Source: Ostrea edulis (Eukaryota). Taken from it: DNA of 64,000 nt. Numbering within the stretch: the first letter of the stretch is position 1; each line of letters opens with the position of its first letter. Under the pieces are notes generated by a model that did no database searches, was not told the origin of the DNA, and saw nothing but the letters and a program-made list of their open reading frames with translations. Below are positions 1,456 through 18,535 of this stretch, in pieces. The stretch covers positions 70,556,001-70,620,000 of the forward strand of contig NC_079172.1 of NCBI RefSeq assembly GCF_947568905.1, in the 5' to 3' direction. The position numbers were made by a program, and so were the translations under genes.

Positions 1456-3120
1456 CACACAGTTGGTTTCCTTAATACACAGTTTGTAAACTGGATACAC
1501 AGTTTATTTTTTGGATACACAGTTTGTTTGTTGGATACACTGTTTGTTTGTTGGATACACAGTTTGCTGGATACACAGTTTGTTTGTTGCATACACAGTT
1601 TGTTTGTTGGATACACAGTTTGTTTACTGGATACACAGTTTGTTTCCTGGATACACAGTTTGTTTGCTGGATACACAGTTTTTGGATACACAGTTTGTTT
1701 GTTGGATACACTGTTTGTTTGTTGGATACACTTTGTTTGTTGGATACACTGTTTGTTTGTTGGATACACAGTTTGTTTGCTGGATACATAGTTTGTTTGT
1801 TGGATACACAGTTTGTTTGCTGGATACACAGTTTGTTGGATGCACAGTTTGTTGGATACACTGTTTGTTTACTGGATACACAGTTTGTTGGATACACAGT
1901 TTGTTTGTTGGATACATTGTTTTTGGATACACAGTTTGCTAGATACACAGTATGTTGCATACACAGTTTCTTGGATACACTGCTTGTTGGATGCACAGTT
2001 TGTTTGTTGGATGCACAGTTTGTTTGTTGGATACACAGTTTGTTGGATACACAGTTCGTTGGATACACTGTTTGTTGGATACACTGTTTGTTTGTTGGAT
2101 ACACTGTGTGTTTGCTGGATACACAGTGTGTTTGCTGGATACACAGTTTGTTTGTAGGATACACAGTTTGCTGGATACACAGTTTCTTTGTTGGATACAC
2201 AGTTTGTTTGCTGGATACACAGTTTTTGGATACACAGTTTGCTGGATACACAGTTTGTAAACTGGATACACAGTTTATTTTTTAGATACACAGTTTGTTT
2301 GTTGGATACACAGTTTGTTTGCTGGATACACAGTTTTTGGATACACAGTTTGTTTGTTGGATACACTGTTTGTTTGTTGGATACACAGTTTGTTTGTTAA
2401 ATACACAGTTTGTTTGTTGGATACACTGTTTGTTTGTTGGATACACAGTTTGTTTACTGGATACACAGTTTGTTTGCTGGATACACAGTTTGTTTGTTGG
2501 ATACACAGTTTGTTTGCTGGATACACAGTTTGTTTGTTGGATGCAGTTTGTTGGATACACTGTTTGTTTACTGGATACACAGTTTGTTTGTTGGATACAG
2601 TTTGTTTCTTGGATACACTGGTTTTGGATACACAGTTTGCTGGATACACAGTTTGTTTGTTGCACACACAGTTTCTTGGATACACTGTTGTTGGATGCAC
2701 AGTTTGTTTGTTGGATACACAGTTTGTTTGTTGGATACACAGTTTGTTGGATACACAGTTTGTTGGATACACAGTTTGTTAAATACACAGTTTGTTTGTT
2801 GAATACACAGTTTGCTAGCCGGATACACAGTTTGCTTGCCGGATACACAGTATTTGGATACACAATTTGTTGGATACAGTTTGTTTGTTGGATACACAGT
2901 TTGTTGGATACACTGTGTGTTTGTTGGATACACTGTGTGTTTGCTGGATACACAGTTTGTTTGCTGAATACACAATTTTTGTGCTGGATACACTTTTTGT
3001 TTGTTGGATACACAGTTTGTTGGATACACAATTTGTTTGCTGGATACACAGTTTGTTTGCTGAATACACATTTTGTTTGCTGAATACACATTTTGTTTGC
3101 TGGATACAGTTTGTTTGTTT
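1456..3120. repeat. Minisatellite, 15-20 bp units (consensus ATACACAGTTTGTTTGTTGG)
   Basis: About 90 units varying in the number of GTTT sub-blocks. Explains all the CIQQT/WIHS-type ORFs in the track. Confidence 0.97.
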
Positions 3121-5193: not shown

Positions 5194-7369
5194 AGTTACA
5201 TGGGTTTCTCCGAACTCTTTGTTTTCCAACGGTCAAACTGATACCATGGTAAATTTTATTTCACGTATGAGTTTTATCTCATTCTATTTTTACCTTTTTT
5301 CTCACAGAATCTGTCAAAATTCTAGATCTATCAACTACACTTTCTCTCACTGGACGACATGCTGCACTGTTTACTGTCTATGCGCATACGTCTGAAGACT
5401 GAAAGGAGGAGACTCGATATTTTTTGTATAGGCCATCAAAAAGTATTAATTTTTACGTTAAAACGATAATTTTTAACTTTAGATAAGTGTTATTTTCGCA
5501 AAGTTCATACTTTCAACAATACAACAAAAATTGAGAAAGCGCTAGGAAAATTGTCATTTCATGATTTTTGCGCAAAATGAGCTGTAGTGTCTCTTTTCGA
5601 AAATTATTTTCGAAATTTAAAAGAAGAAGAAATATAACACAGATAATGGGGTTGTAAGAGGTATTTGAACCAAGGTATAAAATTTACGTTCGGACAACAT
5701 AAAAGATATTGTTGTTGGATAGGTTTCTCATTTTTTCTTTCTTTTTTGTTCTTCAACTGGTATGTCACAAATAAATACTACCTTGTAAAAAACCTTTGGT
5801 GATGGGCAACAAGTTTGATCAATGACACAGTTTTTATCATAGATATTTTTGATTGCCATTAAGGTAGAGACGGATAGCAACCACGTGATCAGTAAAAAGC
5901 GTGTATTTTCAGAATGTGCTACACGGGCAGATGAAAACGAATCTCACTATTCGCAACTTTAGGACTAGGTTATTGCGCATGCGCTAAATATTGACAACGA
6001 ATCAAGCTCGAATTTGTTCAGTTTTTGTAAACAAAAGACCAATCGACATGTGTCACAGTATCAGTACGTATTACACACAGAAAACGATTTGCTTTATACA
6101 TACATTACAACTTACAACACTCGTAAGGTTATTGAGAATAAATTTACACCAACGCCTAATGATATGCATATAATTTCTTGATGTATTACGGACACACATA
6201 ATGTTTATATATGGATAAAAACCATTAAAGATGCTAATACAAATATTTTACAACGTTTAAATAGTGATAGGGAGGTTCGGTGCAGTGCCAAGGGGGGCAC
6301 TACCCCCCCCCCCCTATTTCAGTTATTATGTGGTACCCGAATCTCAATACTACAGGAGTCTACATGTGTAACAAGTGTATAGAGAAAAGTGCATCACAAT
6401 GACACACTACTCGTACATACACCATTCTTTATAGAGATCTCAATAGCCTGTAAACTTTACCTACAGTTTTATACTTACCTGTTCAACAATGAGTTATTGC
6501 ACAATCACGCAGAATAAATAATAAATATTTCAATATTTTTATTTTAATATTCACCAATCAAGAGCCCTCCAGGGGGTGGGAGCATATACAATTTTAACAA
6601 TTGAACATTATAACTACATGATACAATATACACATGTATACCATATACACATGTTAGAGTTTCTACAATTGACATTAGTCTTGAATTGGCTCATCATAAT
6701 GCTGATTGAAAATGCACTGTACAAGTGTACTATATGGGTAGTAAAGTAAAACAATATTATAAAATGTTGTCATGAACACAGAGGGTACCCAGGGATGGTG
6801 CCTGTGCCAAGTCCATTAGACTGGCAGTCTTGTACCCCAAGAATTCGAGACAGCTTATTTATAGATGTATTTATGATGTCTTTATAGTGAGCCACATCTT
6901 GCATATTCTGTTTCAGTATTCTATGGATTTAAAGCAAACCTTCTGAGTAAATTTTTAAAAATTATGTTTCTTACTATTACAAGTTCTAAGATGCCATAGA
7001 ATACGATAGATTTATTTCTAATTCAGAGCCCCAACAGGGCATAAGGAGATGTTACATACATAAGGGGGGGGGGCACACCAAAAGACAGAATTGAAACAGG
7101 ACAAAAATTACATTGGACAAGAAGGAAGGAGGAGTCACTGCACTTCTTATGGTTATATTTCAAGTAAACGATTGGAGCTGATCTTCAAGCTAAATAACAC
7201 ACAAACATACACACCTATACATAAAGGTGTATACACACACATCTAAATATTAAAAATCATTAATACACCAACATTGTTTGCAAGTAATTAAGTAATTAGC
7301 CATAGGGTTTAAAACATCTAATCTATATGCAGTAGAAAACTCCATACTTACTTACTCCGACATGTAAAC

Positions 7370-7757
7370 ATAATGGAGCCTGAACCCAAAAGTCATAAAT
7401 TTCACAACTATAGCATATGACTCATTATAATAATGCAAACAGTTTGCCTCCTTGCTCTCTAGAAGTGAAAAAGGTTTTCGGTGATAAAACATATTTTCAA
7501 TATATGACCAATTTAGCTCCACTCTGGGTCCTAAACCCAGAGTTTATAAATTTCACAGTTTATTTTAATCTTGCCCAAGGGAGGTAGGGTCAATGAAATT
7601 CACATTTTTTGTTCCCCTTAACCCATAGATACTTTATACCAAATTTTGTTAGAACTGGTTCAGCTGTTCAAAAGAAGCTTCAAATGTTCCATTGTTTATA
7701 ACTGACTGATAAAAACAGATAGCAATAGGTCTCCTGAATGATTGAGGTGACCTAAAA
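7370..7757. repeat. Helentron-associated interspersed repeat fragment with terminal hairpin
   Basis: Ends in the degenerate palindrome AGGTCTCCTGAATGATTGAGGTGACCT plus an A-run (7727-7759). A similar end occurs at 42572-42600. Family assignment is from recall of oyster repeats. Confidence 0.4.
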
Positions 7758-8004
7758 AATTTAAAGTCCCTTAACTCCGCAACGACGAAGGCAGAAAGAC
7801 AGTATTGATGGATGGACGTGCAGACAGAATGATTACTCTAGGGCACCTGCCATATGATGGGGACCTATAAATTACTTTGATTTTTATACCGATAAATATG
7901 CATGAAAATAAATAGTTTATGTTATATAATATTATTTAAAGAAGTCATTTCTGCCAAATGTATTCTCCTTGATGTATTTTCTACTGAAGATGTGTAACCT
8001 TTAA

Positions 8005-8469
8005 GGGGAGTGATTTATTACTTTCTCCAAAATTTTGTTTCTCACTTTCAATGATCAAAATCTACTGTCTATGTGTTTAAAAGATTTTACTTAGAAATTA
8101 AAGTTTAATACATTATAAAAGAAGATCATTTTAGAGAGTCTATTATTTTATTTTTTTTTGTAAAAAAGTTGGTGGTATGTTGCTGTTAACAGTTTATGAA
8201 ATTTTCAAAAGAAATGGATATAGATACAAGTTTATTATATCTTTCACATTTTAAGCATTCTTACAAAATTAATAATTCATAGGTTTGTTTGTATTCATTA
8301 AAAGACTCAAGTCTTTGTTTACATAACACATATCTAAGGCTAAAATATTTCTTTTATTCTTGCATTCAGAAGGTCAAAATTTTGGATGTCAACATTAAAT
8401 GAGTTATGTTTTTAATGGTTAACATCAAAAATGAAAAATATTTCATTCAACAATCGTGAACCCGTCCCT
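8005..8469. mobile_element. TTAA-flanked Kolobok-like insertion inside the MULE
   Basis: TTAA at 8001-8004 and 8470-8473; weak TIR similarity (GGGGAG.. / ..CCCGTCCCT). Removing it restores a continuous minus-strand open frame (see findings). Confidence 0.5.
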
Positions 8470-8884
8470 TTAACCCTGTCCATGCTGACTGGTATGCAAT
8501 GATAACAACTGTTTATTAAATCTGTATAATCAATACATGTTTTAAGTCTTCTCATAACATCCATTAATCTTGAGAAAATATAAACTCTTTTATTTCACAA
8601 AAACCAACAAATTTCCTTGCAGGAGTTGATGCATCAATTTGGTACACACATCGTCTTTTCGGGTACTTTACCCCTGTAAAGGAAATTTGATAATGTTAAT
8701 TTTGTGTACAAATTTCATTTTTACAAATTCATAGTTCATCATAACAATAAAAGTAAATCTGCAAATAGTGTAAAATCCAAGTGGCATGGTAGAGCTAATC
8801 TTTATGAGAACTTCATTGGCAAAAATAAATTTAATTACATTTTAATAAGGTGTTTTAAGTAAATTAGCTTTTCAAGTTGTTTAA

Positions 8885-9157
8885 GGTAGCTCACTACACT
8901 AAAGCTTATACTCTGTATGACACCACGTCACAAGATGACAATTTAAATGTTTTGTGAAATTATTTGTATCGATCTATTTGTTTGTCTATCATTGTAGCTC
9001 AGTGGTTAAAGCATTAGGCTAGTGAACGCAGATCTTGAGTTCAAATCCCCCAGTCTTTTATTCATGTGAAATTTTTTTTTTTGAAAATCATGTTTTTATC
9101 CAAATTTGTATATTTTTTGCCTCTTTGGAATATATACTTATTGTATAGTGAGTCATC
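8885..9157. mobile_element. Kolobok-like MITE carrying a tRNA-derived segment
   Basis: TTAA at 8881-8884 and 9158-9161. TIR GGTAGCTCACTACA versus the reverse complement GATGACTCACTATA (10/14). A-box-like TAGCTCAGTGG and B-box-like GAGTTCAAATCCC within 8994-9051. Confidence 0.6.
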
Positions 9158-10773
9158 TTAAATAGCTATTGTTGGCCTACAGAAATGACCAACTCTGCAA
9201 TGTATACAAGTTATGTTATAAAATCTTGTGGTTTTCTACTGTCTATCATAATTGAGAAGTGAGTCTGTATGAAAATCACAATGTTATACATCCCTACCAA
9301 GTTTCCTGGTAAATGAATCTGATGACTATGTATGTCAGTTTGTCTCCCTGGGCCTCATCAGTCAGAGAAGAGATCAAACTGAGACACCAAAATTGTCAAG
9401 GAAATTCCCTGATACCTTCCTGGTTTCAAATATACATTTTCACTACATGTATGTTTTTACAAGTTTTATTTTTACATATTCTCAAAATTCACATATTTAA
9501 ACATTAAAATATTGAGCTTTATTCAAGAAACCAGGAAAGTTTCGGCCCATTTTGAAATGGAATTCTGCAGCAATGAAACAAATCACATTAAAACGATTGT
9601 ATCCTCTCATAAATCCTTTAGTTTAAGTTAGTATTATGGGCCTATAGTCTAGTCAATCTGTCAAAATTTAAGCCAAACCTCAAACTAATTGGTACAAAGC
9701 TAATTACCACTAAAAATAAGGTATTTATGTCATGTGTACAAGTAACATTAAAACAATACAAAATTATAACTTGAGGAAAATTCAATTTTGGGGCAAATAT
9801 TGGGTTTACATTGAGAAATCGTGGAAATGTGAAATTTTTTAAATACAGTAATTATATCATATCAATTGGTATCAGATTATTTAAAACTCAAATTACAGGA
9901 TTGGATATGGACAATTATTATAAAATCTTTTGTATATTTTTTATATGTTGTTGAGACTATATTCTAGTATAACTTAAAGCAATAAAAGCTTTTGTAGCCA
10001 TTAGTTTGAGGTCATCCTGTACATTGACTAGACTACTATTTAAAAATTGTTAATCAAAATGTAAGAAGAAAAGGAGGAAAATTTTATTTGCAAAATTTCG
10101 CTTGCATTAATTCACCTGCACAAACATTCCGCTATATAAGCACATCTGCCACTGTGAGTCTATAAGTGGACTGTTGAGATTATCTAATATTACACATTTT
10201 ATCCTCCAATATAAACATAACTTGTAACGTAATATTAGTATGCAAGTAAAAGTTGTTAATGATAGAATATTAATAATCAAGAAATGATCTGTCTTGTCTG
10301 TCTAATCATGAATTCATTGACTATCCTGCAACAAAACACTGGCCTAGAGCTGCCAGCTAAGCTCATCTACCATTGTCAGTCTACTACTGGACTGACTTAA
10401 TGCCTGTTACAGTTGTCAATCGGTTAAAAATTGAAATTGAATAGCACATACTGCTAGAGTGGTCTTGAAATTCTTTGAAGCAATAAAACTTTACATTAAT
10501 AGACAGGCAGTACACAAATACCTAGAATAAAACAAACTGAAACAAAATAATTAACTGGAACAAATACATGTATATATTACCTAGCCTTACAAACTATTAG
10601 ATGAAAACTGAACATGATTTAAGCACACAAGATATTTTCCATATGCCCTTCCCCACTGTCTATGGTCTGTCAAAGTCTAAAAGTATGGTTGACACTATCC
10701 ATACTTGCATTATGTATGACATTAAAAGGAATACACATACATGTATATCTGATGATAAAAAGGAATGACAATC

Positions 10774-13101
10774 TTATTTATCATCATCTTTAGTACCATT
10801 ATTGTTTTGTCCACCTGTAAATATAACATCTTGTTTTCTTCCATCACTTTGTATAATTGTTACCCTTCTACCATATAGTGAAGGAGGAATTCTATACCAA
10901 GAGGGTAGGCCTTGAGGTTCAGTAGGATTGATAACTGGACCCTGTGGTTGCAATGGAAGGACCGGTGGCTCAGTGGGAGGAACAAGTCTTAAGGGAGGAT
11001 ATGGTGCTACAGATGGCCCCATTCTCTGACTTTCTTGTGATTCAGCAACCCGATTTTTACCTGACCTTTGACCTTGTTCTATACCTTGATTTATGCTTTG
11101 AAGAAGCACCTTCTCTTTCTCTTGCTGGGATGGCTTTCTTAAAGGATTTCTTCTCTTCTTCCCAGGATTTTTAGCAGTGGACCTAAAGCGTGGCTGTAAT
11201 ACATTATTGGCATTGGAAGATATTTTCTCAGTCCTCTTAAACCCTTTTAAGGAGTTTGGGAGGTTTTCACACCCGTCATTGGCAGAAATTATGTGATCCA
11301 ATGCTGTGACAATATTATCCAGTCTATATTCCTGAACACGAGGACTATTCTTTATCTGAGACATTATTTTGTTCAGTTTTTCTTGAATACCTTGAATCTT
11401 TGATGAAGTCGAAGTGTCACAAATATTTCTTTTCTTAACTGGTGGACTGATAACCTTGTCAGTAATATTTTCATTATGAATGTTAGTCTGATCCTCTAAT
11501 GTACAGCTACCAGTATTACGATAAAGTAAGGACTGAACCTTGTGTAGATGTTTACAAATATTCCCTTCCAAATAGTCATAACAGTTGCAAGTAAGGAGAT
11601 GTCTACACAGATCTATACAGGGTACTTTTTTACATTTCATGTAACAATGTGTTTCAGGACATTTCTGACAATGCGTCACTACTGTATATAAATTTTTCTG
11701 TGATTTAAGGGTGAATGTGTTTTCATTAACCTGACAGACTGAGGAATTTTGAATCTCAAAACTACTCTGATGTCGATCCAAAGTCTTCATAATTTCCCCT
11801 GAAGGAATATTGAACTTTTTAGCAGCCAAATGTTTGAAATACAAATTATTTTCAATCTGTAGCAGGGTTTCCAGCAGAATGTCTATTCTACGATTTCTTT
11901 TTCCTTCAAAGTAAATTGTTTTTAATTGATTGTGAAAGCTTTCCAAAAACATATTTGTATTAACATTGGAATATTCACCTTTCCTGAAACACATTGCCCA
12001 CTTCTCTTTTCTCAACAAGTAATAATTATTGAAGTATGTCAGTAAATTTGGATTAATGTCAGACAATCTTTGAACCAGAATATCACAATATGTATTCAAT
12101 AATGTTTCAGTCTTAGCATCCATTGCAGCACATAATAAACAATAAATTTCGGCTTGCTGCTCTGTGTCTTTAACATGCTGCTGAATTTTTAATCGCCAGT
12201 TTTTGTGTACATGCCAAATACATAGGAAATGTTCTAAGTTTGATCCATATACATTCTTTGCTGCATTCCAACCAGCATTGTCATCATCTGTCATTAAAAT
12301 ATTTACTTTTGTTTGTGGAGATTTGCTTTTAACAGCATTTAAAAAAACAGAAATAGCTTGTTCATTTTCTTTATTGGAAATACAAAATGCAACAGGATAA
12401 CCACATCTAAATTCATCTGGAACTAGAAGGGTTATCAACTTAAATGAATATAAGTTTGTTTTGTGGGTGGAATCCATGCAAAGAATTATGGGTGCATATT
12501 TTTCATACATGTCTAGCTGTTGTTTCGTCATTATTGCCAACATAAAGTCTTCCTTAGCCAGTCCAATCTTGCTGTCATCTACATTTTGTTGTTTAAAAAT
12601 CAGAATGGGATCAAATATTTCTTTCCTTAAAGCATCTACTCGAAGAAATGTTGATGTTGCATCATCACTGTGTCTAATAACAGATGAGTCAATAATCTTT
12701 TGCTTTAGATTGTGTATTGTCTTTCTGTCAATCAAATGATAATGTTTCAGGTCTGTCAAGTCATCTCGATTGTTTCTGTCACTAAATTTGTCTCTAACTT
12801 TGTCTAAAATTGTATTTATAGGAATTTTTAATGCTAACATAGTTTTTATGTCTGACTTCAAATGATCTGGAATAGGTAAAAATTTACTATCTTCAAAAGT
12901 TGTTGAGTGTGTGTGTGATTGTATGTATTTTGCTTTAACTGTTCCATCCTTCTCTACCAAAACTGAAAATCTTGATAAGCATAAACCATCTAATTTACAT
13001 GAACCCTTTTTTTTTCTCCCTCCTCTTTCTATCTTTTGTATCACATGCAATTCGCTTTTTCCCATCCCTATGACAAACCAGTGTGTATCTCTCAGAACCA
13101 T
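10774..13101 (-). CDS. MULE (Mutator) DDE transposase with C-terminal SWIM zinc finger
   Basis: CMDSTH (D1), LMTDDD (D2), CIWH (CxxH), FLESFHNQLK (E), SWIM CNCYDYLEGNICKH. The genuine coding frame probably begins near the A9 run at 13007-13015; the annotated Met-proximal residues are likely out of frame. Confidence 0.93.
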   Translation of the reverse strand: MVLRDTHWFVIGMGKSELHVIQKIERGGRKKKGSCKLDGLCLSRFSVLVEKDGTVKAKYIQSHTHSTTFEDSKFLPIPDHLKSDIKTMLALKIPINTILDKVRDKFSDRNNRDDLTDLKHYHLIDRKTIHNLKQKIIDSSVIRHSDDATSTFLRVDALRKEIFDPILIFKQQNVDDSKIGLAKEDFMLAIMTKQQLDMYEKYAPIILCMDSTHKTNLYSFKLITLLVPDEFRCGYPVAFCISNKENEQAISVFLNAVKSKSPQTKVNILMTDDDNAGWNAAKNVYGSNLEHFLCIWHVHKNWRLKIQQHVKDTEQQAEIYCLLCAAMDAKTETLLNTYCDILVQRLSDINPNLLTYFNNYYLLRKEKWAMCFRKGEYSNVNTNMFLESFHNQLKTIYFEGKRNRRIDILLETLLQIENNLYFKHLAAKKFNIPSGEIMKTLDRHQSSFEIQNSSVCQVNENTFTLKSQKNLYTVVTHCQKCPETHCYMKCKKVPCIDLCRHLLTCNCYDYLEGNICKHLHKVQSLLYRNTGSCTLEDQTNIHNENITDKVISPPVKKRNICDTSTSSKIQGIQEKLNKIMSQIKNSPRVQEYRLDNIVTALDHIISANDGCENLPNSLKGFKRTEKISSNANNVLQPRFRSTAKNPGKKRRNPLRKPSQQEKEKVLLQSINQGIEQGQRSGKNRVAESQESQRMGPSVAPYPPLRLVPPTEPPVLPLQPQGPVINPTEPQGLPSWYRIPPSLYGRRVTIIQSDGRKQDVIFTGGQNNNGTKDDDK

Positions 13102-13492
13102 CCTTGTTTACAGTTTTTGGTCTATGCAAAACATATCTTGTGTTTTTGTTTATAAACTCTTCTGTCAAATATTTCTCAAAAGAATCAAGATTTTCAAAGT
13201 TCAAATCTTCCACCCTAATGTCTGCATCATGATTATTTATCAAATGACTCACAAGAATTTCAACATGATAAAAATCTAAGTCGCATGATGGAACAATACA
13301 TGGCATTCTTTTACCATTTTCTTTCTCATGTACAGATTTCTTGTGCCTATTCAAATTTGCTTTATCATGGAAAATTTTCATGCAAACTGAACACTGATTT
13401 TTCTGATAGATACCATGTTCTACATTTGTAACTTGATCATATGAATGTATTGTCTGTATGTAGTCTGTAGATTTTGTGGATTTTCTAGTATA
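12995..13492 (-). CDS. Two C2H2 zinc fingers plus MULE N-terminal region (shifted frame)
   Basis: Frame is open upstream of the annotated Met. It gives CSVCMKIFHDKANLNRHKKSVH and CIVPSCDLDFYHVEILVSHLINNH, then YTLVCHRDG..KRREKKK, which continues as KKKGSCKLDGLC in the transposase frame. Confidence 0.85.
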   Translation of the reverse strand, partial: YTRKSTKSTDYIQTIHSYDQVTNVEHGIYQKNQCSVCMKIFHDKANLNRHKKSVHEKENGKRMPCIVPSCDLDFYHVEILVSHLINNHDADIRVEDLNFENLDSFEKYLTEEFINKNTRYVLHRPKTVNKDGSERYTLVCHRDGKKRIACDTKDRKRREKKKGFM

Positions 13493-14166
13493 TCAATTGT
13501 CTCTCGTCTGTTTGTAGTCTTCAATGAGTTCAATGTATCCAAGTTAAATTTCCTACATGCAGAATGATCAAAATTCCAGCAATAATTACTTTTGAATGCT
13601 AATGATACTGGTTCTCTCTGATTGTCTGGTGGTGATGTTTCAGTCACTGTTTCATAATGTCCACCCCCTGCCCTTGTCCAAATCAAATGAATTCTAGAAT
13701 TTGAATTTCCAAAGTCATGTTCAAGCGTCACAACTTCTGGATTATCCTGATCACCACCAACAGTTACTAATAAGTTGATTCCAAAATGCCTAGACATTGC
13801 CAAAATTGATTCCTGCCCTGCAAAAGTGCCTAACTGCCTAAGATTATTCAGTTCTTGTTGAATTTCTGGATAAGTCATTTGGTTACCATTAGAATGATAG
13901 AAAAACATATGAAAAATATCCAAATTTTGTTCAATTTCATGTATTGCTGCATTTCGTAGCTCTTGGTGATGATTTTGGTTTCCATAGAGGGCAAGACTAA
14001 CAGACCTAAAGAGACAATTCCCATCCCCTACTATTGGTTGTCTGTGAAGTCCATATAATGTCAAATATTCATCCTGACGGGTACGTTCAAGTTCAGAATC
14101 ATCTAACATTTGTAAATGGACCTCATTATTTATGACTCTATCAATTACCGAGTCAGTCTCTGAAAT
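13420..14166 (-). CDS. OTU-family cysteine protease (deubiquitinase-like) domain
   Basis: GDGNCLFRS catalytic Asp/Cys motif and GGGHYE His motif. Acceptor tacatttttgtAG (14167-14168) opens the frame in phase 0 (ISETDSVID...MLDDSE). Confidence 0.88.
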   Translation of the reverse strand: MSETDSVIDRVINNEVHLQMLDDSELERTRQDEYLTLYGLHRQPIVGDGNCLFRSVSLALYGNQNHHQELRNAAIHEIEQNLDIFHMFFYHSNGNQMTYPEIQQELNNLRQLGTFAGQESILAMSRHFGINLLVTVGGDQDNPEVVTLEHDFGNSNSRIHLIWTRAGGGHYETVTETSPPDNQREPVSLAFKSNYCWNFDHSACRKFNLDTLNSLKTTNRRETIDILENPQNLQTTYRQYIHMIKLQM

Positions 14167-14747
14167 CTACAAAAATGTAGTATTCATGTTAAAGACCATG
14201 CATTAATATTAGACAATAGACTGACACTAGCGTAAAATCTATTGTGTTAGAAATCTAACAAATTTGTGTAAATTAGCAGTATCCACCACAGTTAATGAAC
14301 ATTGGAATGACTAATGGTCACGGCCATTTATTCAATGCTGATAATATAATGTTCAATATTTCTTCTTAATACTCCTTTTTTGTGTAGACCTTTCATCCCC
14401 TTTATGTACTTTTATTTTAATATGGTAAGTTTGGTTTTCAACTTGGCTTCTTGATTTTGGAGAGGAAGTAGAAATTCAAAAAGCAGTCAATGATAAATGA
14501 TTTTCATAAGTCTTCAGCTCAGGCTAATCTGACATTCCTCTAACTCTTACTTGTAGTTTTATATATATATATAAACAAGTGATAGATCCAGTCATGTATA
14601 TATAAAAGTGGAAGTAAATGGTCAGAGGAATCTCAGATTAAATAATGCAGGCTAAGAAATGATGACTGTAAATATATGTGATACAAATTTCTTATTCAAC
14701 AACTTACTTGAAACCATGGCTCAGATGTAGGATTTACTTATACTTAC

Positions 14748-15253
14748 ATCAGTTGAATCCAAAGAAAACTGTTGAGGGTAGGCATCCACTGTTCTCTACA
14801 ATAAGCATGATAAGACTATAATAAATTTAAATTTTTCCACTTGCATATCTTTGACAGAATACTCCTAATGTAAATATATTCAATGGAAATTGAAACTAGA
14901 TGTCTTGCACACACATATGGGTATTCATATAATACAGTTTACTCCTGAAGAAATCAGTTGAGTATATATTCTATCAGCTTTGTGATATTTCTTAGTATAT
15001 ATATAACTTACTGGTATCTCAGGAAGCAACTCCAATAACGGAATATCTCCAGTCATCTAAATTAAAAATTATGAACCACAGTGACAAAAGAATGTAATAC
15101 ATGTACACATGTACATTTGTAATACCATATTCAAACATACATAAAGATAAAATACAGACATGAAAATACATATATTGTTAAAATTGTATGTACATGTATA
15201 TGCCCCTCGAGGGCCCTTGATTGGTGACGAAACAAATTAAAAAAAAAATACAC

Positions 15254-15297
<44 letters not shown>

Positions 15298-16356
15298 TAC
15301 TCTTTGTAATAGGCCAGCATTTTGAATTCTAACTGGTATCATTGAAAAAATCAAAATCTGTAATTTTTGTGTGGAGTGGCTTGTTGTACATGTATGTGCG
15401 TACATATACTTGTATACAAACTGTATTTCAGCCAACCAACTCCAGCATTCTAATTTTAAAGTTACATCCATATTGTATATATTCTTACAGGAACTGAGAA
15501 CTGGTCACTGCCATCTTTCATCCCAAAGACTATAGTAAAGAGCACTACAACCTACAAAAAATAGACACATTCATGAACTAACTGAGATATCTTTCTATAA
15601 GATTCAACAAAATAAATGATCAGTGTTCCATCATTTTTTAAAGTAATTTATGACAATAGACAACTTTAAGCTAATTTAGACTAAATTAGATTGGATTTCT
15701 TAGTGTAATGGCATAGCTAAAAAGTTGCGTAATAATTTTTAACATGTATAAAATTTAAATACTAAGTTGAACTACATAACCACAATACTATTCTAACATT
15801 AGAGTTCATAACAATACTGTTATATGAATTTTCAAGATGAGAGACCTCCTTTCGTGTTGTGAACTGTCCACTAAGCCTATCCTGTGTGCATTGAAGCATT
15901 CCATTATTTTCATGATCATCACTGACTCATTAATAAAGTTATATAACTTAGATAAATTACAGTTGGGTTGCATGGAAATGCATATATATATAAATGCTAA
16001 TACACACGTATGTTTATGCGATGAATGCAATACATATATTGAGTACTTGTAATAAAGCATCTGAATAAATTACATGGAAATTAAATTATTCTGACACATT
16101 TAACCTATTAATACCACCAATTTATGTTTTGAACTAACCGGCTTATAAAATTCCAGTATTCATTAAAACCATTCTTATGCTTGTTCTATGAAACAACATT
16201 TAAAAGCAGTGTTTTACGTAACATGTGTTGTAGAATATCCATCACTAAAGGGACGTTCATGATCCGTTTGTTCAAAAATGCACTTTCAGTGAAAAAAACA
16301 CCAGTAACTAAAAGATAAACATTACTTACGAAAAACACTGTCAAACTTTGCGCCAT
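14748..16356 (-). CDS. Candidate 5' coding exons of the MULE gene
   Basis: caacATGG exon 16356-16330 (MAQSLTVFF|gtaagt); 15551-15489 (63 nt); 15056-15012 (45 nt); 14795-14748 (48 nt). All are phase 0-0, stop-free, with good AG/GTAAG sites. Confidence 0.5.
15260..15294. repeat. (GA)n microsatellite
   Basis: Direct observation. Confidence 0.95.
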
Positions 16357-18535
16357 GTTGGATGCAGAAGGTGAAGGTCAGAAATAGCGCATGCGCAATA
16401 GCCTAGTCCTAAAGTTGCGAATAGTGAGATTCGTTTTCATCTGCCCGTGCAAACTTCCACCAGAGTTCGTTTGCTCACATTCGTAGGCACTGTGACGTAA
16501 TGAGGCCTCGACGAGGAGTTTGCTGCCCGTGTAGCCTTAGTACGTAAGTCCTCGAGCTCGCGCTTCATACTTCACCGCATATGCAGTAGGCTGTGACGTC
16601 ATAGCTACTGCCCGTGTAGCACATTCGTATTTTCACGTGAAATTATTTTTCGGAATTCCGCACACCGTCATAGAGTAGTTGAAAAACAAAAAGGGGTTCC
16701 GAAAGTACAAGTTGTTGCTGTGACTGACTCGATGATTGAGAGGGTCGTCTCGACGAAAGATAGAGAAATTTGGCCATAGTTTAGATTAGGAATACGTCAA
16801 CGTAATAATAGTGGACCAAATGTTTCGTCCGTGAAGAATGGCACTTTTTACCTCACGAAATTCACCACCATGCATAGCTACACTACGTAAACAAAGTTGT
16901 TGATGTAGCGTGATCGTGATGTCCGAGTGCTGCAAGTTTCAATACTGTTTATGTAGTCATTGAGAGTTTAAACAAAGTTTCTTCTGAGAAGAGGAATTCG
17001 ATGGATGCATTCAACGTGGACAACGAAATCATTATTTCGTTTGGTAAGTGAAAAAAATGGCAAATTAAATTTGTATTCAACCCGCTTTTCCTCTGCTATT
17101 TCACAACGCGATTTTATAATAACATCTGTAAGCGCACAACTTGGAGCTGTTTCATTTTTTGTGCATTTATGTATTCCATATGTGCCCAAAATATAACTCC
17201 TACATGCACATGTAATTGTAAAGGGATGTCATGTATGTGCCAGATTTAAAAAAAATAGGGCTCCCACAAGTTTGAGGGGGGGGGGGGGGGGTTGAGTGTT
17301 GCACTAAAATTCTATTTGGTATATATGATAGTACTTATAGCATCTTGAAATTTCATTGACCTAAGAGATATTTCAAATCTGGGGTTTCATGTTTCACACA
17401 AGCATGTAGGTCTACAAAACTTTATTTAAAATATTTGTAAAATCACAAGCCCCCCTCATAGGCAAATATATTTATTGTATGAAAATAAGATATGTACAAA
17501 ATGTATGTCCTTCTCTTGACCCACACTCGGTAAAGGAGACCGGTGTGATAAATCTAGAGTTGTCTTGTTTTGATATTATCAGAATGAACTGGCAGTTTAT
17601 GAAAACATATCTGTCATCTCATATTGCAATATGATATTGTGATGTTTATTCACCTCATTGAGGACCCGGGGGTGGGGGTGGGGGTGTATGTACAACAATA
17701 TGAAATAAATAACAATCATGCAGATGTACTACAACTGCATGAGTTCACATTGCTGCAGCACTGCACACATTTAACCTAGTGTTACATATGTAATACTGAT
17801 TTCAGACAAGATTTTAAAAATTAACATAATGAAATACATGTTGTATGTAATTTTCAATATATCAGCATTTTATAGTTCACTGAACATGCATTGAGCAGCT
17901 GTTGAGACACACAATTTTGAAAATTGACATTGTCTAACACAGTATAATTAATTCTGACTGTGCAAATATTAATTATGATTTTTTTTTCTAAGCATCATCC
18001 TAAGGACCAGTGCAAGTTGAAATGGGCTCCGAGCCAACAACTTCAACAGCAATTTGCCATGAAAATCAGCAAGAAAGGTACACTATTTTCTAAGGTAGAA
18101 TTTTTCATATTATCACCAGACATTTATAAAGACAATTTTTAGTATATTAGATATTCATCTTTTTTTTTCAATATTTGAAAATACAGAATATATTTTAACA
18201 GGTACTTCATTTACATTGATGATGTCATACCCCCTGGACACCACAACTTTACAGGTTACAGAGAAAATTCAAGAACTTCTGCAAAATGTGGGATTTGGAT
18301 AGAATCAATTAATGTATTTGTGATCCCAGAGCAATGGATATATTGTGCAACATACTAAAGTGTGAATTTAATGGAAAACAAGTACATGTACTCATGTATT
18401 ACATGTCTTTCTTAAAGACAATAATATTGCATAAATATAGAGGAAGTGTCATTGTTGATTATTCTAAGTTTTTGATATATCAAAATCAGTAAACAATTCT
18501 AAATGAAAATAAAATACCAATTTCATAACTTTAAT

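What the first reader, a model, noticed from the sequence alone, without database searches (positions are those of the whole stretch)
5903..16635. Structurally complete, apparently young 10.7-kb Mutator element
It has a perfect 9-bp TSD, a perfect outer TIR, a 64/65 inner inverted block and an intact D-D-E, CxxH and SWIM set. This implies recent insertion and possibly an active family. The supplied ORF track hides the element boundaries.
Basis: partly seen in the sequence, partly recalled or inferred. Interest (0 to 1): 0.7.

Follow-up and report, generated by a model that had tools for sequence, protein, structure and literature searches.

The report
Oyster Mutator transposon inside another's ends
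This is a real, recently inserted Mutator-type transposon in an oyster genome, but it is a composite: a slightly broken 10.5-kb copy of one family sits exactly between the short end-repeats of a second family, which is ordinary transposon biology with one odd structural twist.

Summary
These are the 9-bp duplication GTATTTTCA, the perfect 19-bp outer inverted repeat, the 64/65 inner inverted block, and the D-D-E, CxxH and CxC..CxH motifs. Seven paralogous copies of the host repeat act as empty sites with a single GTATTTTCA, so the insertion is genuine.

The 10.7-kb unit is not one element.
- **Family A:** window 5939-16432 (10,494 bp) is a Mutator-like element (MULE) with 48-bp terminal inverted repeats (TIRs) and an OTU-C2H2-MULE-SWIM transposase. 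Ten other A copies end exactly at GAATCTCAC...GTGAGATTC, each with its own 9-bp target-site duplication (TSD).
- **Family B:** the outer repeat is the 27-bp TIR of a second, more abundant MULE family (at least 241 hits to the 19-mer). The window's TSD belongs to these B ends.
- **No A TSD here:** A lies exactly between the two B TIRs, with no B interior and no TSD of its own.
- **Right end:** the right B TIR carries two small MITEs in the same 9-bp target, which explains the extra 177 bp.

The copy is young: 4 private substitutions in 6.4 kb, and 0.25% from its nearest copy. Its transposase frame is nevertheless split in three by a private 7-bp deletion and an A9-versus-A8 run. Four sister copies keep one 1131-1132-codon frame.

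Verdict: young and structurally bounded, but composite and probably non-autonomous. The family looks recently active. How the composite formed is unresolved. An earlier scan note on the same stretch also reported the two frame breaks.

The parts
5858..5911 (+). Left piece of the host repeat (family C, starts TTAAGGTAGAGAC...), interrupted by the insertion
   Evidence: Joined flanks align across the junction in one HSP to 7 paralogous C copies, L057-L063. C has at least 40 copies at 96-99% identity.
5903..5911 (.). Left copy of the 9-bp target-site duplication GTATTTTCA
   Evidence: Paralogous empty sites hold it once.
5912..5938 (+). Left TIR of MULE family B (27 nt, GAATGTGCTACACGGGCAGATGAAAAC)
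   Evidence: The 19-mer has 241 genome hits with 0 in the controls, often as inverted pairs about 6.56 kb apart. It is identical to the ends of B copies L018-L023.
5939..16432 (-). Family A MULE, 10,494 bp, transposase on the minus strand
   Evidence: Ten other A copies end exactly here with their own 9-bp TSDs. The 31-mer TIR has 57 genome hits. Full-length copies are 98-99% identical.
5939..5986 (+). Family A left TIR (48 bp), private T at 5970
10777..13107 (-). Open frame piece 3: MULE catalytic core (D210, D272, E387, CxxH), SWIM-like CxCx8CxH and C-terminal tail. The listed ORF is 10774-13101, 775 aa.
   Evidence: Pfam MULE and ZSWIM1-3 RNaseH-like, motif positions, 53% aa identity to the family B protein
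13007..13015 (-). Frame break 2: run of 9 A (coding strand) where intact copies have 8. The run length varies among copies (6-9).
   Evidence: A homopolymer, so an assembly error cannot be excluded.
12998..13492 (-). Open frame piece 2: C2H2 zinc-finger region, in a different frame from pieces 1 and 3
   Evidence: tblastn against the family B 988-aa protein places it in frame +3 against +1. Frames.
13477..13478 (-). Frame break 1: 7-bp deletion (TCCCATG present in L024, L025 and L027), private to this copy
13423..14166 (-). Open frame piece 1: OTU cysteine protease / deubiquitinase domain (GDGNC... and ...GGGHYE motifs). The listed ORF is 13420-14109, 229 aa.
   Evidence: Pfam OTU at 45.3 bits, cut-off 23.3. 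The sister-copy protein matches human OTUD1 chain 4bop_A at E 2.8e-18.
16385..16432 (-). Family A right TIR (48 bp)
16433..16449 (-). Inner 17 nt of the family B right TIR (GTTTTCATCTGCCCGTG). The last 9 nt are the first copy of the MITE target CTGCCCGTG.
16450..16522 (+). MITE U1 (73 bp, CAAACTTCC...GGAGTTTG), TSD CTGCCCGTG
   Evidence: Other U1 copies have their own 9-10-bp TSDs. About 1,093 genome copies.
16523..16531 (.). Second copy of CTGCCCGTG, shared as TSD by U1 and U2
16532..16607 (+). MITE U2 (76 bp, TAGCCTTAG...CATAGCTA), TSD CTGCCCGTG
   Evidence: Other U2 copies have TSDs GGATGTAAT and GCAGCTGCTG.
16608..16626 (-). Terminal 19 nt of the family B right TIR. With both MITEs and two CTGCCCGTG copies removed, 16433-16449 plus 16617-16626 is the exact reverse complement of 5912-5938 (27/27).
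16627..16635 (.). Right copy of the TSD GTATTTTCA
16636..17100 (+). Continuation of the host family C repeat

Best explanation
The feature is a composite of two related Mutator-like (MULE) families in an oyster genome.

- **Family A (5939-16432):** a 10.5-kb cut-and-paste DNA transposon with 48-bp TIRs and 9-bp TSDs. It has one gene for an OTU protease - C2H2 finger - MULE DDE transposase - SWIM protein of about 1,130 residues.
- **The window copy:** it is one of the youngest A copies. Its gene is cut into three frames by a private 7-bp deletion and a one-base change in an A run. It could probably move only with transposase supplied by intact sister copies.
- **The odd placement:** it has no TSD of its own. 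It lies exactly between the two 27-bp TIRs of family B, a more abundant family whose long copies encode a 53%-identical OTU-C2H2-MULE protein.
- **The TSD:** GTATTTTCA was made when family B ends integrated into a copy of a high-copy repeat (family C).
- **The right end:** two small MITEs (U1, U2) sit in one 9-bp target inside the right B TIR and leave its terminal 19 nt intact.

Shown: the boundaries, family assignments, empty site, frame breaks and youth.

Inferred: A first landed at the inner edge of one B TIR. The B interior was then lost by homology-driven template switching or recombination between the identical B TIRs, for example during gap repair. Whether that happened here or before the composite moved here cannot be told. 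Also inferred: the unit could now be moved in trans by either family's transposase, as 5939-16432 through the A ends or as 5912-16626 through the B ends.
For: - A boundaries: ten other A copies carry 9-bp TSDs directly outside GAATCTCAC...GTGAGATTC, 8 perfect and 2 at 8/9. The window's A flanks GATGAAAAC and GTTTTCATC are reverse complements, not direct repeats.
- B identity: the outer 19-mer has 241 genome hits against 0 controls. B copies L018-L021 each have a perfect 9-bp TSD and the same TIR of about 29 nt.
- B coding: B copy L022 has a 988-aa OTU + C2H2 + MULE ORF, 53% identical to the window's. The 6.56-kb B copy L018 has no ORF of 120 aa or more, and L019 none above 90 aa.
- Uniqueness: the B27|A junction occurs only at the window's two ends.
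- Right end: decoded as U1 and U2 with TSD CTGCCCGTG. The restored TIR equals the reverse complement of the left TIR, 27/27.
- Empty site.
- Frame breaks: private to the window. L024, L025, C5:69.28M and C8:56.95M keep one frame of 1131-1132 codons.
- Youth: 4 private substitutions in 6,455 columns; nearest copy 0.25% away.
- Domains.
Against: - The origin of the TSD-less, exactly symmetric placement is not shown. No other A copy sits at that B TIR position.
- No TIR-only 'micro-B' element exists in the genome.
- The A-run frame break could be a homopolymer assembly error. The 7-bp deletion is not in a homopolymer, so that kind of error is unlikely.
- Independent read support for the B|A junctions was not obtained. 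Logan contigs stop 30 nt into the flanking repeat.
- The order of the U1/U2 insertions, A's arrival and the B integration is unknown.
Confidence: 0.8

Rival explanations
1. One reading: one autonomous, structurally complete 10.7-kb Mutator element. Its own TIR would be the 19-bp outer repeat plus the 65-bp inner block, with an asymmetric right end.
For: A perfect TSD sits directly outside perfect 19-bp repeats. The catalytic core ORF is intact. Sequence divergence is very low.
Against: - All ten other family A copies tested end 27 nt further in on the left and 194 nt further in on the right, each with its own TSD.
- The outer repeat is the TIR of a separate family with at least 241 hits, its own TSDs and its own transposase.
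- The B|A junction is unique to this locus.
- The right-end asymmetry is two MITE insertions.
- The full frame is broken twice.
Confidence: 0.07
2. Ordinary nested insertion: family A transposed normally into a short family B derivative (a MITE made of little more than the two TIRs) already sitting in repeat C.
For: - Nested insertions into B-related sequence do occur. A copy C1:57.08M sits in a U2-like sequence with TSD GTTACGAAG.
- U1 sits in B TIRs at three loci.
- Two B elements share one 9-bp target at C2:44,574,68x.
Against: A normal A insertion makes a 9-bp direct duplication. Here the flanks match at only 4/9 and are reverse complements. No B TIR pair with 0-30 nt between the arms exists in the genome.
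Confidence: 0.08
3. Two independent A insertions at mirror-image positions (TIR nt 19-27) of the left and right TIRs of a full B element. Recombination between the two A copies then deleted the B interior.
For: It predicts exactly the observed GATGAAAAC[A]GTTTTCATC flanks. B TIRs do attract 9-bp-TSD elements: 3 of about 1,093 U1 copies lie in B TIRs, against about 0.01 expected from a TIR target of about 7 kb in 895 Mb. This history is a variant of the best explanation, not a contradiction of the composite reading.
Against: It needs three events, within the short time implied by 4 private substitutions. No single A insertion at that TIR position is seen in any other B copy.
Confidence: 0.15
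4. Assembly artefact: a chimeric join of repeats produced the B-A-B arrangement.
For: The region is built of repeats, and I could not bridge the junctions with independent reads.
Against: The two junctions are exact mirror images at single-base precision. The flanks rejoin perfectly with a clean TSD. Misassembly does not produce target-site duplications or nested MITE TSDs.
Confidence: 0.03

Closest known systems
Mutator/MuDR superfamily (MULEs), including maize Mu elements and Pack-MULEs
   Same: 9-bp TSD, TIRs, and a DDE transposase with the Pfam MULE domain, a CxxH motif and a C-terminal SWIM-type finger. As with the maize Mu classes and Pack-MULEs, one pair of TIRs can enclose unrelated internal DNA moved in trans (Pack-MULEs as described in PMC6431247; the maize Mu classes are my own knowledge).
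   Different: Here the DNA enclosed by the family B TIRs is not a host gene fragment. It is a complete second MULE, captured exactly end to end, with only 27 nt of B left on each side.
MuDR-6_HM (Hydra) and MULE-Cg (Crassostrea gigas) groups in Dupeyron et al. 2019 (PMC6446971)
   Same: The paper's table lists an 'Ovarian Tumour Gene' (OTU) as the extra domain of MuDR-6_HM. It lists 48-bp TIRs for one of the neighbouring mollusc MULE-Cg elements. Family A has an OTU domain and 48-bp TIRs in an oyster.
   Different: No sequence comparison was possible because Repbase and Dfam are not available here. Identity with MULE-Cg is therefore a lead, not a result.
Medicago MULE transposases fused to an OTU papain-like protease (Babu et al. 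2006, PMC1702500)
   Same: OTU protease and MULE transposase in one polypeptide. The authors proposed that the protease processes a transposon polyprotein.
   Different: In Medicago the OTU is C-terminal and the DNA-binding domain is WRKY-GCM1 type. Here the OTU is N-terminal and is followed by C2H2 fingers.
OTU-carrying Helentrons and Ginger1 elements
   Same: These are other animal DNA transposons that carry an OTU-like cysteine protease (PMC6431247). The Ginger paper PMC2836005 surfaced in the searches, but I did not read it.
   Different: Their transposition enzymes differ (RepHel, integrase-like DDE). They have no MULE domain and no 9-bp TSD.

Membership tests
Mutator-like element (MULE) superfamily | Target-site duplication of 9 bp (8-11) made on insertion | tested here: met
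   The window has a perfect GTATTTTCA duplication with paralogous empty sites. Ten other A copies and four other B copies have 9-bp TSDs.
Mutator-like element (MULE) superfamily | Terminal inverted repeats | tested here: met
   A: 48 bp, 47/48 identical. B: 27/27 once the two MITEs are set aside.
Mutator-like element (MULE) superfamily | Transposase with MULE domain (Pfam PF10551) above the gathering score | tested here: met
   48.2 bits against a cut-off of 27.6, covering profile positions 1-99 of 99. The sister copy scores 45.9 bits and family B 56.5 bits.
Mutator-like element (MULE) superfamily | D-D-E triad with a C/DxxH motif after the second D | tested here: met
   D210, D272, CIWH 294-297 and E387 in NMFLESFHNQLK. 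All are conserved in the 53%-identical family B protein. Assignment of these residues as catalytic rests on the known MULE signature, not on a test here.
Mutator-like element (MULE) superfamily | SWIM zinc finger CxCxnCxH | tested here: inconclusive
   The motif C505-x-C507-x8-C516-x-H518 is present and conserved in family B. No Pfam SWIM hit at E<=0.05.
Autonomous (self-mobilising) element | Uninterrupted full-length transposase frame | tested here: not met
   The window frame is split into 248 + 165 + 777 codons by a 7-bp deletion and an extra A. L024, L025, C5:69.28M and C8:56.95M have a single frame of 1131-1132 codons.
Single family A element with canonical ends | A 9-bp direct duplication immediately outside GAATCTCAC...GTGAGATTC | tested here: not met
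   GATGAAAAC against GTTTTCATC, 4/9 matching and reverse complements. All ten other copies meet this feature.
OTU deubiquitinase / cysteine protease domain | Pfam OTU above the cut-off, with the catalytic Cys and His motifs | tested here: met
   PF02338 at 45.3 bits against a cut-off of 23.3. The GDGNC and GGGHYE motifs are present. Similar to OTUD1 chain 4bop_A at E 2.8e-18. Activity was not tested.
Recent or polymorphic insertion | Presence/absence polymorphism among individuals, or absence in sister species | tested here: inconclusive
   Contigs from four public runs cover the unique flank 5567-5887 but end inside repeat C before the junction. No related genomes were available.

The most novel reading that the evidence does not exclude
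A whole MULE was captured end to end between the bare TIRs of a different MULE family, without a target duplication. That would be a natural 'TIR swap' that puts one transposon under the mobilising control of another family's transposase. It could arise by capture of an excised linear element or by template switching during gap repair. The 10.7-kb chimera would then have been moved into this site as a unit by the family B enzyme. Together with three U1 MITEs, two U2 MITEs and tandem B elements found in or beside B TIRs, it would point to MULE ends being preferred landing sites for other 9-bp-TSD elements.
Probability: 0.25. Interest if true: 0.5.

Novelty: new member of a known kind. Interest (0 to 1): 0.3.

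Why it matters
The stretch holds two MULE families, two MITE families and a host repeat in 10.8 kb.

For biology: family A is a low-copy, very recently active OTU-C2H2-MULE family in an oyster. Its copies differ by 0.25-1%, mostly have perfect TSDs, and several have open frames. That makes it a reasonable candidate for a currently mobile bivalve DNA transposon, and a source of structural polymorphism.

The TSD-less placement of A exactly between family B TIRs is a small but clean natural example of how chimeric MULEs with swapped ends can arise. It is a single locus, and the mechanism is not shown.

Tried and rejected
- **Is the outer TIR family A's own?** I looked for the outer-TIR core in 17 end loci of other A copies and found none. 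Their similarity starts at GAATCTCAC.
- **Is the extra 177 bp on the right a set of subterminal transposase-binding repeats?** Rejected. It resolves into two MITEs, each with TSDs here and at other loci.
- **Are the ORF breaks introns?** Rejected. Sister copies read straight through, and the breaks are a 7-bp deletion and a 1-base run change.
- **Is there a TIR-only micro-B element that could have been the target?** None found.
- **Does the B27|A junction occur elsewhere?** Only in the window.
- **Population test with public runs.** Uninformative, because the Logan contigs break inside the flanking repeat.
- **Rfam scan of 5500-17100.** Nothing found.
- **PDB sequence search.** It matched only the OTU domain; no solved MULE transposase was matched.
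- **Not run.** The large protein searches, because Pfam already placed the protein. Repbase/Dfam comparison, because it is not available.


Full report
**1. Observation**

- GTATTTTCA occurs at 5903-5911 and again at 16627-16635.
- The 19 nt inside them, GAATGTGCTACACGGGCAG, are perfect inverted repeats at 5912-5930 and 16608-16626.
- An inner block 5922-5986 pairs with 16449-16385 at 64/65. The mismatch is at 5970/16401.
- On the minus strand there are three ORFs:
  - 775 aa (10774-13101), matching Pfam MULE and ZSWIM1-3 RNaseH-like;
  - 128 aa (12995-13381);
  - 229 aa (13420-14109), matching Pfam OTU.
- The 775-aa ORF carries D210, D272, CIWH 294-297, E387 and CxCx8CxH at 505-518.

**2. The insertion is genuine**

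The right flank from 16627 onward is a high-copy repeat, which I call family C. It has at least 40 copies at 96-99% identity.

Inside a script I joined the left flank to the right flank with one TSD copy. The join aligned as a single ungapped HSP of 518-543 bp to seven paralogous C copies. Those copies read ...AATCGT GTATTTTCA CGTGAAATT... with a single GTATTTTCA.

The flanks therefore rejoin into an empty site, and the 9 bp are a true target-site duplication. The insertion lies 53 bp inside a C copy that starts near 5858.

**3. The 10.7-kb unit is two families, not one**

A whole-genome search found many relatives of the interior. The genome is 895 Mb with ten large chromosomes, and the window is C9:70,556,001-70,620,000. 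The matches stopped about 25 nt inside the left end and about 190 nt inside the right end.

*Family A.*
- At other loci the similarity begins at GAATCTCACTATTCGCAAC..., and the flanks diverge immediately outside it.
- This 31-mer has 57 genome hits, many as inverted pairs about 10.5 kb apart.
- Ten such pairs have a 9-bp TSD directly outside GAATCTCAC...GTGAGATTC, 8 perfect and 2 at 8/9.
- In the window, family A is 5939-16432 (10,494 bp) with 48-bp TIRs.

*Family B.*
- The outer 19-mer has 241 hits against 0 controls, often as inverted pairs about 6.56 kb apart.
- Four of the 6.56-kb copies (L018-L021) share a TIR of about 29 nt, GAATGTGCTACACGGGCAGATGAAAACAA. Each has a perfect 9-bp TSD.
- L018 has no ORF of 120 aa or more, and L019 none above 90 aa.
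- A longer B copy (L022, C3:79,150,912-79,162,184, 11.25 kb) has one 988-aa ORF with OTU, C2H2 and MULE domains.
- That protein is 53% identical to the window's protein over the catalytic part, 45% over OTU and 31% over the finger region.

A and B are therefore related but distinct MULE families.

**4. The right end**

The stretch 16433-16626 looked like three direct copies of CTGCCCGTG separating two units. Both units are MITEs.
- **U1** (16450-16522, 73 bp) has about 1,093 genome copies. At other loci it has its own 9-10-bp TSDs.
- **U2** (16532-16607, 76 bp) likewise has its own TSDs elsewhere.
- In the window both are flanked by CTGCCCGTG, so they entered the same 9-bp target one after the other.
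- With both MITEs and two of the three CTGCCCGTG copies removed, what remains is GTTTTCATCTGCCCGTGTAGCACATTC. That is the exact reverse complement of 5912-5938, 27/27.

Before the MITE insertions the structure was TSD - B TIR (27) - family A (10,494) - B TIR (27) - TSD, with nothing else of B.

**5. The odd point**

- The window's A copy is the only one of eleven without its own TSD. Its flanks, GATGAAAAC and GTTTTCATC, are reverse complements because they are the inner ends of the two B TIRs.
- The B27|A junction exists nowhere else in the genome.
- No TIR-only B element, with 0-30 nt between the arms, exists either.
- A normal A transposition into a short B derivative is therefore not what is seen.

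Histories that fit the observed flanks:
- **(a)** A lands at the inner edge of one B TIR with TSD GATGAAAAC. The B interior is then lost by homology-driven template switching between the identical inverted B TIRs, for example in synthesis-dependent repair after an excision attempt.
- **(b)** Two A insertions occur at mirror-image TIR positions, followed by recombination between the two A copies.
- **(c)** An excised linear A molecule is captured at a break.

I favour (a) because it needs the fewest events, but none of the three is shown. I also cannot tell whether the chimera formed at this site or moved here as a unit on its B ends.

**6. Coding state**

I compared the coding region with other copies.
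- L024 (C6:84.74 Mb) and L025 (C7:86.22 Mb) each have one open frame of 1132 codons.
- Full-length copies C5:69,283,120-69,293,691 and C8:56,949,384-56,959,964 have frames of 1132 and 1131 codons.
- The window frame is split into 248 + 165 + 777 codons.

The two differences are:
- a 7-bp deletion between 13478 and 13477, private to the window;
- a run of nine A at 13015-13007 where the open copies have eight.

The A run varies among copies, so it could be a real slip or a homopolymer assembly error. The 7-bp deletion is not in a homopolymer, so that kind of error is unlikely.

The net change is -6 nt, so the first and third pieces share a frame. The C2H2 part between them is out of frame, and the OTU frame stops at 13423.

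The copy can therefore at most make an OTU fragment, and perhaps a catalytic core lacking its presumed DNA-binding fingers. It is probably non-autonomous. My comparison adds that they are private lesions, not a feature of the family.

**7. Age**

I aligned six copies over 6,455 columns.
- The window copy has 4 private substitutions, the fewest of the six.
- It differs from its nearest copy (C7:86.2 Mb) by 0.25%, and from the others by 0.55-0.84%.
- The family as a whole differs by 0.25-1.05%.

Together with mostly perfect TSDs and open frames in several copies, this supports a recent burst and possibly ongoing activity. 'Young' is supported. 'Complete' is not.

**8. Population test**

- Public runs that hold the flank include some labelled oyster metagenome, so the host is an oyster.
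- Contigs from four runs in four studies cover the unique left flank 5567-5887 at single-copy depth. They end 30 nt into repeat C, before the junction.
- Fixation or polymorphism of the insertion is therefore undecided.
- No related genomes were available.

**9. Comparison with what is known**

- The element meets the MULE criteria: a 9-bp TSD, TIRs, a MULE domain above Pfam's cut-off, and the D-D-E and CxxH motifs. The SWIM motif is seen by eye only.
- OTU proteases in MULEs are already on record. The table in Dupeyron et al. 2019 lists an OTU gene for Hydra MuDR-6_HM, and 48-bp TIRs for a neighbouring Crassostrea MULE-Cg group (PMC6446971).
- Babu et al. 2006 described Medicago MULE transposases fused to an OTU domain. 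They suggested polyprotein processing (PMC1702500).
- The OTU domain here resembles the human deubiquitinase OTUD1. Deubiquitination of the transposase or of host factors is an equally open possibility. Neither role was tested.
- MULE TIR pairs that enclose unrelated DNA are typical of the superfamily, as in the Mu classes and Pack-MULEs (PMC6431247). The new detail here is that the enclosed DNA is an entire second MULE, captured exactly from end to end.

**10. Verdict**

- The feature is a new member of a known kind: a young, coding-damaged copy of an OTU-C2H2-MULE family, enclosed by the TIRs of a sister family that itself bears two MITEs, all inside another repeat.
- Interest is modest. The TSD-less chimera and the apparent attraction of 9-bp-TSD elements to family B TIRs are the only unusual aspects, and both rest on few loci. 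For U1, 3 of about 1,093 copies lie in B TIRs, against about 0.01 expected by target size.

Noticed in passing
window 16450-16607; L034 (C9:31,535,6xx), L039 (C3:81,096,3xx), L036 (C2:44,581,3xx): MITEs U1 (about 1,093 copies) and U2 repeatedly sit inside family B TIRs. U1 does so at three loci, two of them with the same target GGGCAGATGA, one in a left TIR and one in a right TIR. U2 does so at two loci. About 0.01 U1 hits are expected by target size, which suggests that B ends are preferred landing sites.
   Followed up: partly
L037 (G000:C2:44,574,400-44,575,400), positions 269-315: Two family B ends lie back to back, separated only by the 9 bp TTATTTATA. Those 9 bp are also the TSD of the element on the right. 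A second B element apparently inserted into, or re-used, the first one's target duplication.
   Followed up: no
window 5858-5911 and 16627-17100 and beyond: Host repeat 'family C' starts TTAAGGTAGAGAC(C/G)GATAGCAACCACGTGATCAG. It has hundreds of candidate copies at 96-99% identity. Its type was not determined, but the TTAA at its start hints at a piggyBac-like target.
   Followed up: no
window 5500-5610: The end of another very abundant repeat, with at least 40 copies at 95-100% over about 97-110 bp. Read depth there is thousands-fold above single copy.
   Followed up: no
window about 5775: Contigs from two public runs (X8, X17) carry about 45 extra bases at this point of the unique left flank. 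This is an indel polymorphism among individuals.
   Followed up: no
L014/L050 (G000:C1:57,080,521-57,090,166): A diverged family A copy (about 81-90% identity) with a perfect TSD GTTACGAAG is inserted inside a U2-like sequence.
   Followed up: no
window about 9143-9147: All other family A copies carry about 57-60 bp here that the window copy lacks, or the alignment breaks at a short repeat. The left 3.2 kb of the element is also more diverged between copies (96-98%) than the rest (about 99%).
   Followed up: no
window 1472-3091: Long overlapping ORFs of 253-269 aa lie on both strands, which usually signals a low-complexity or repeat region. I did not examine it.
   Followed up: no
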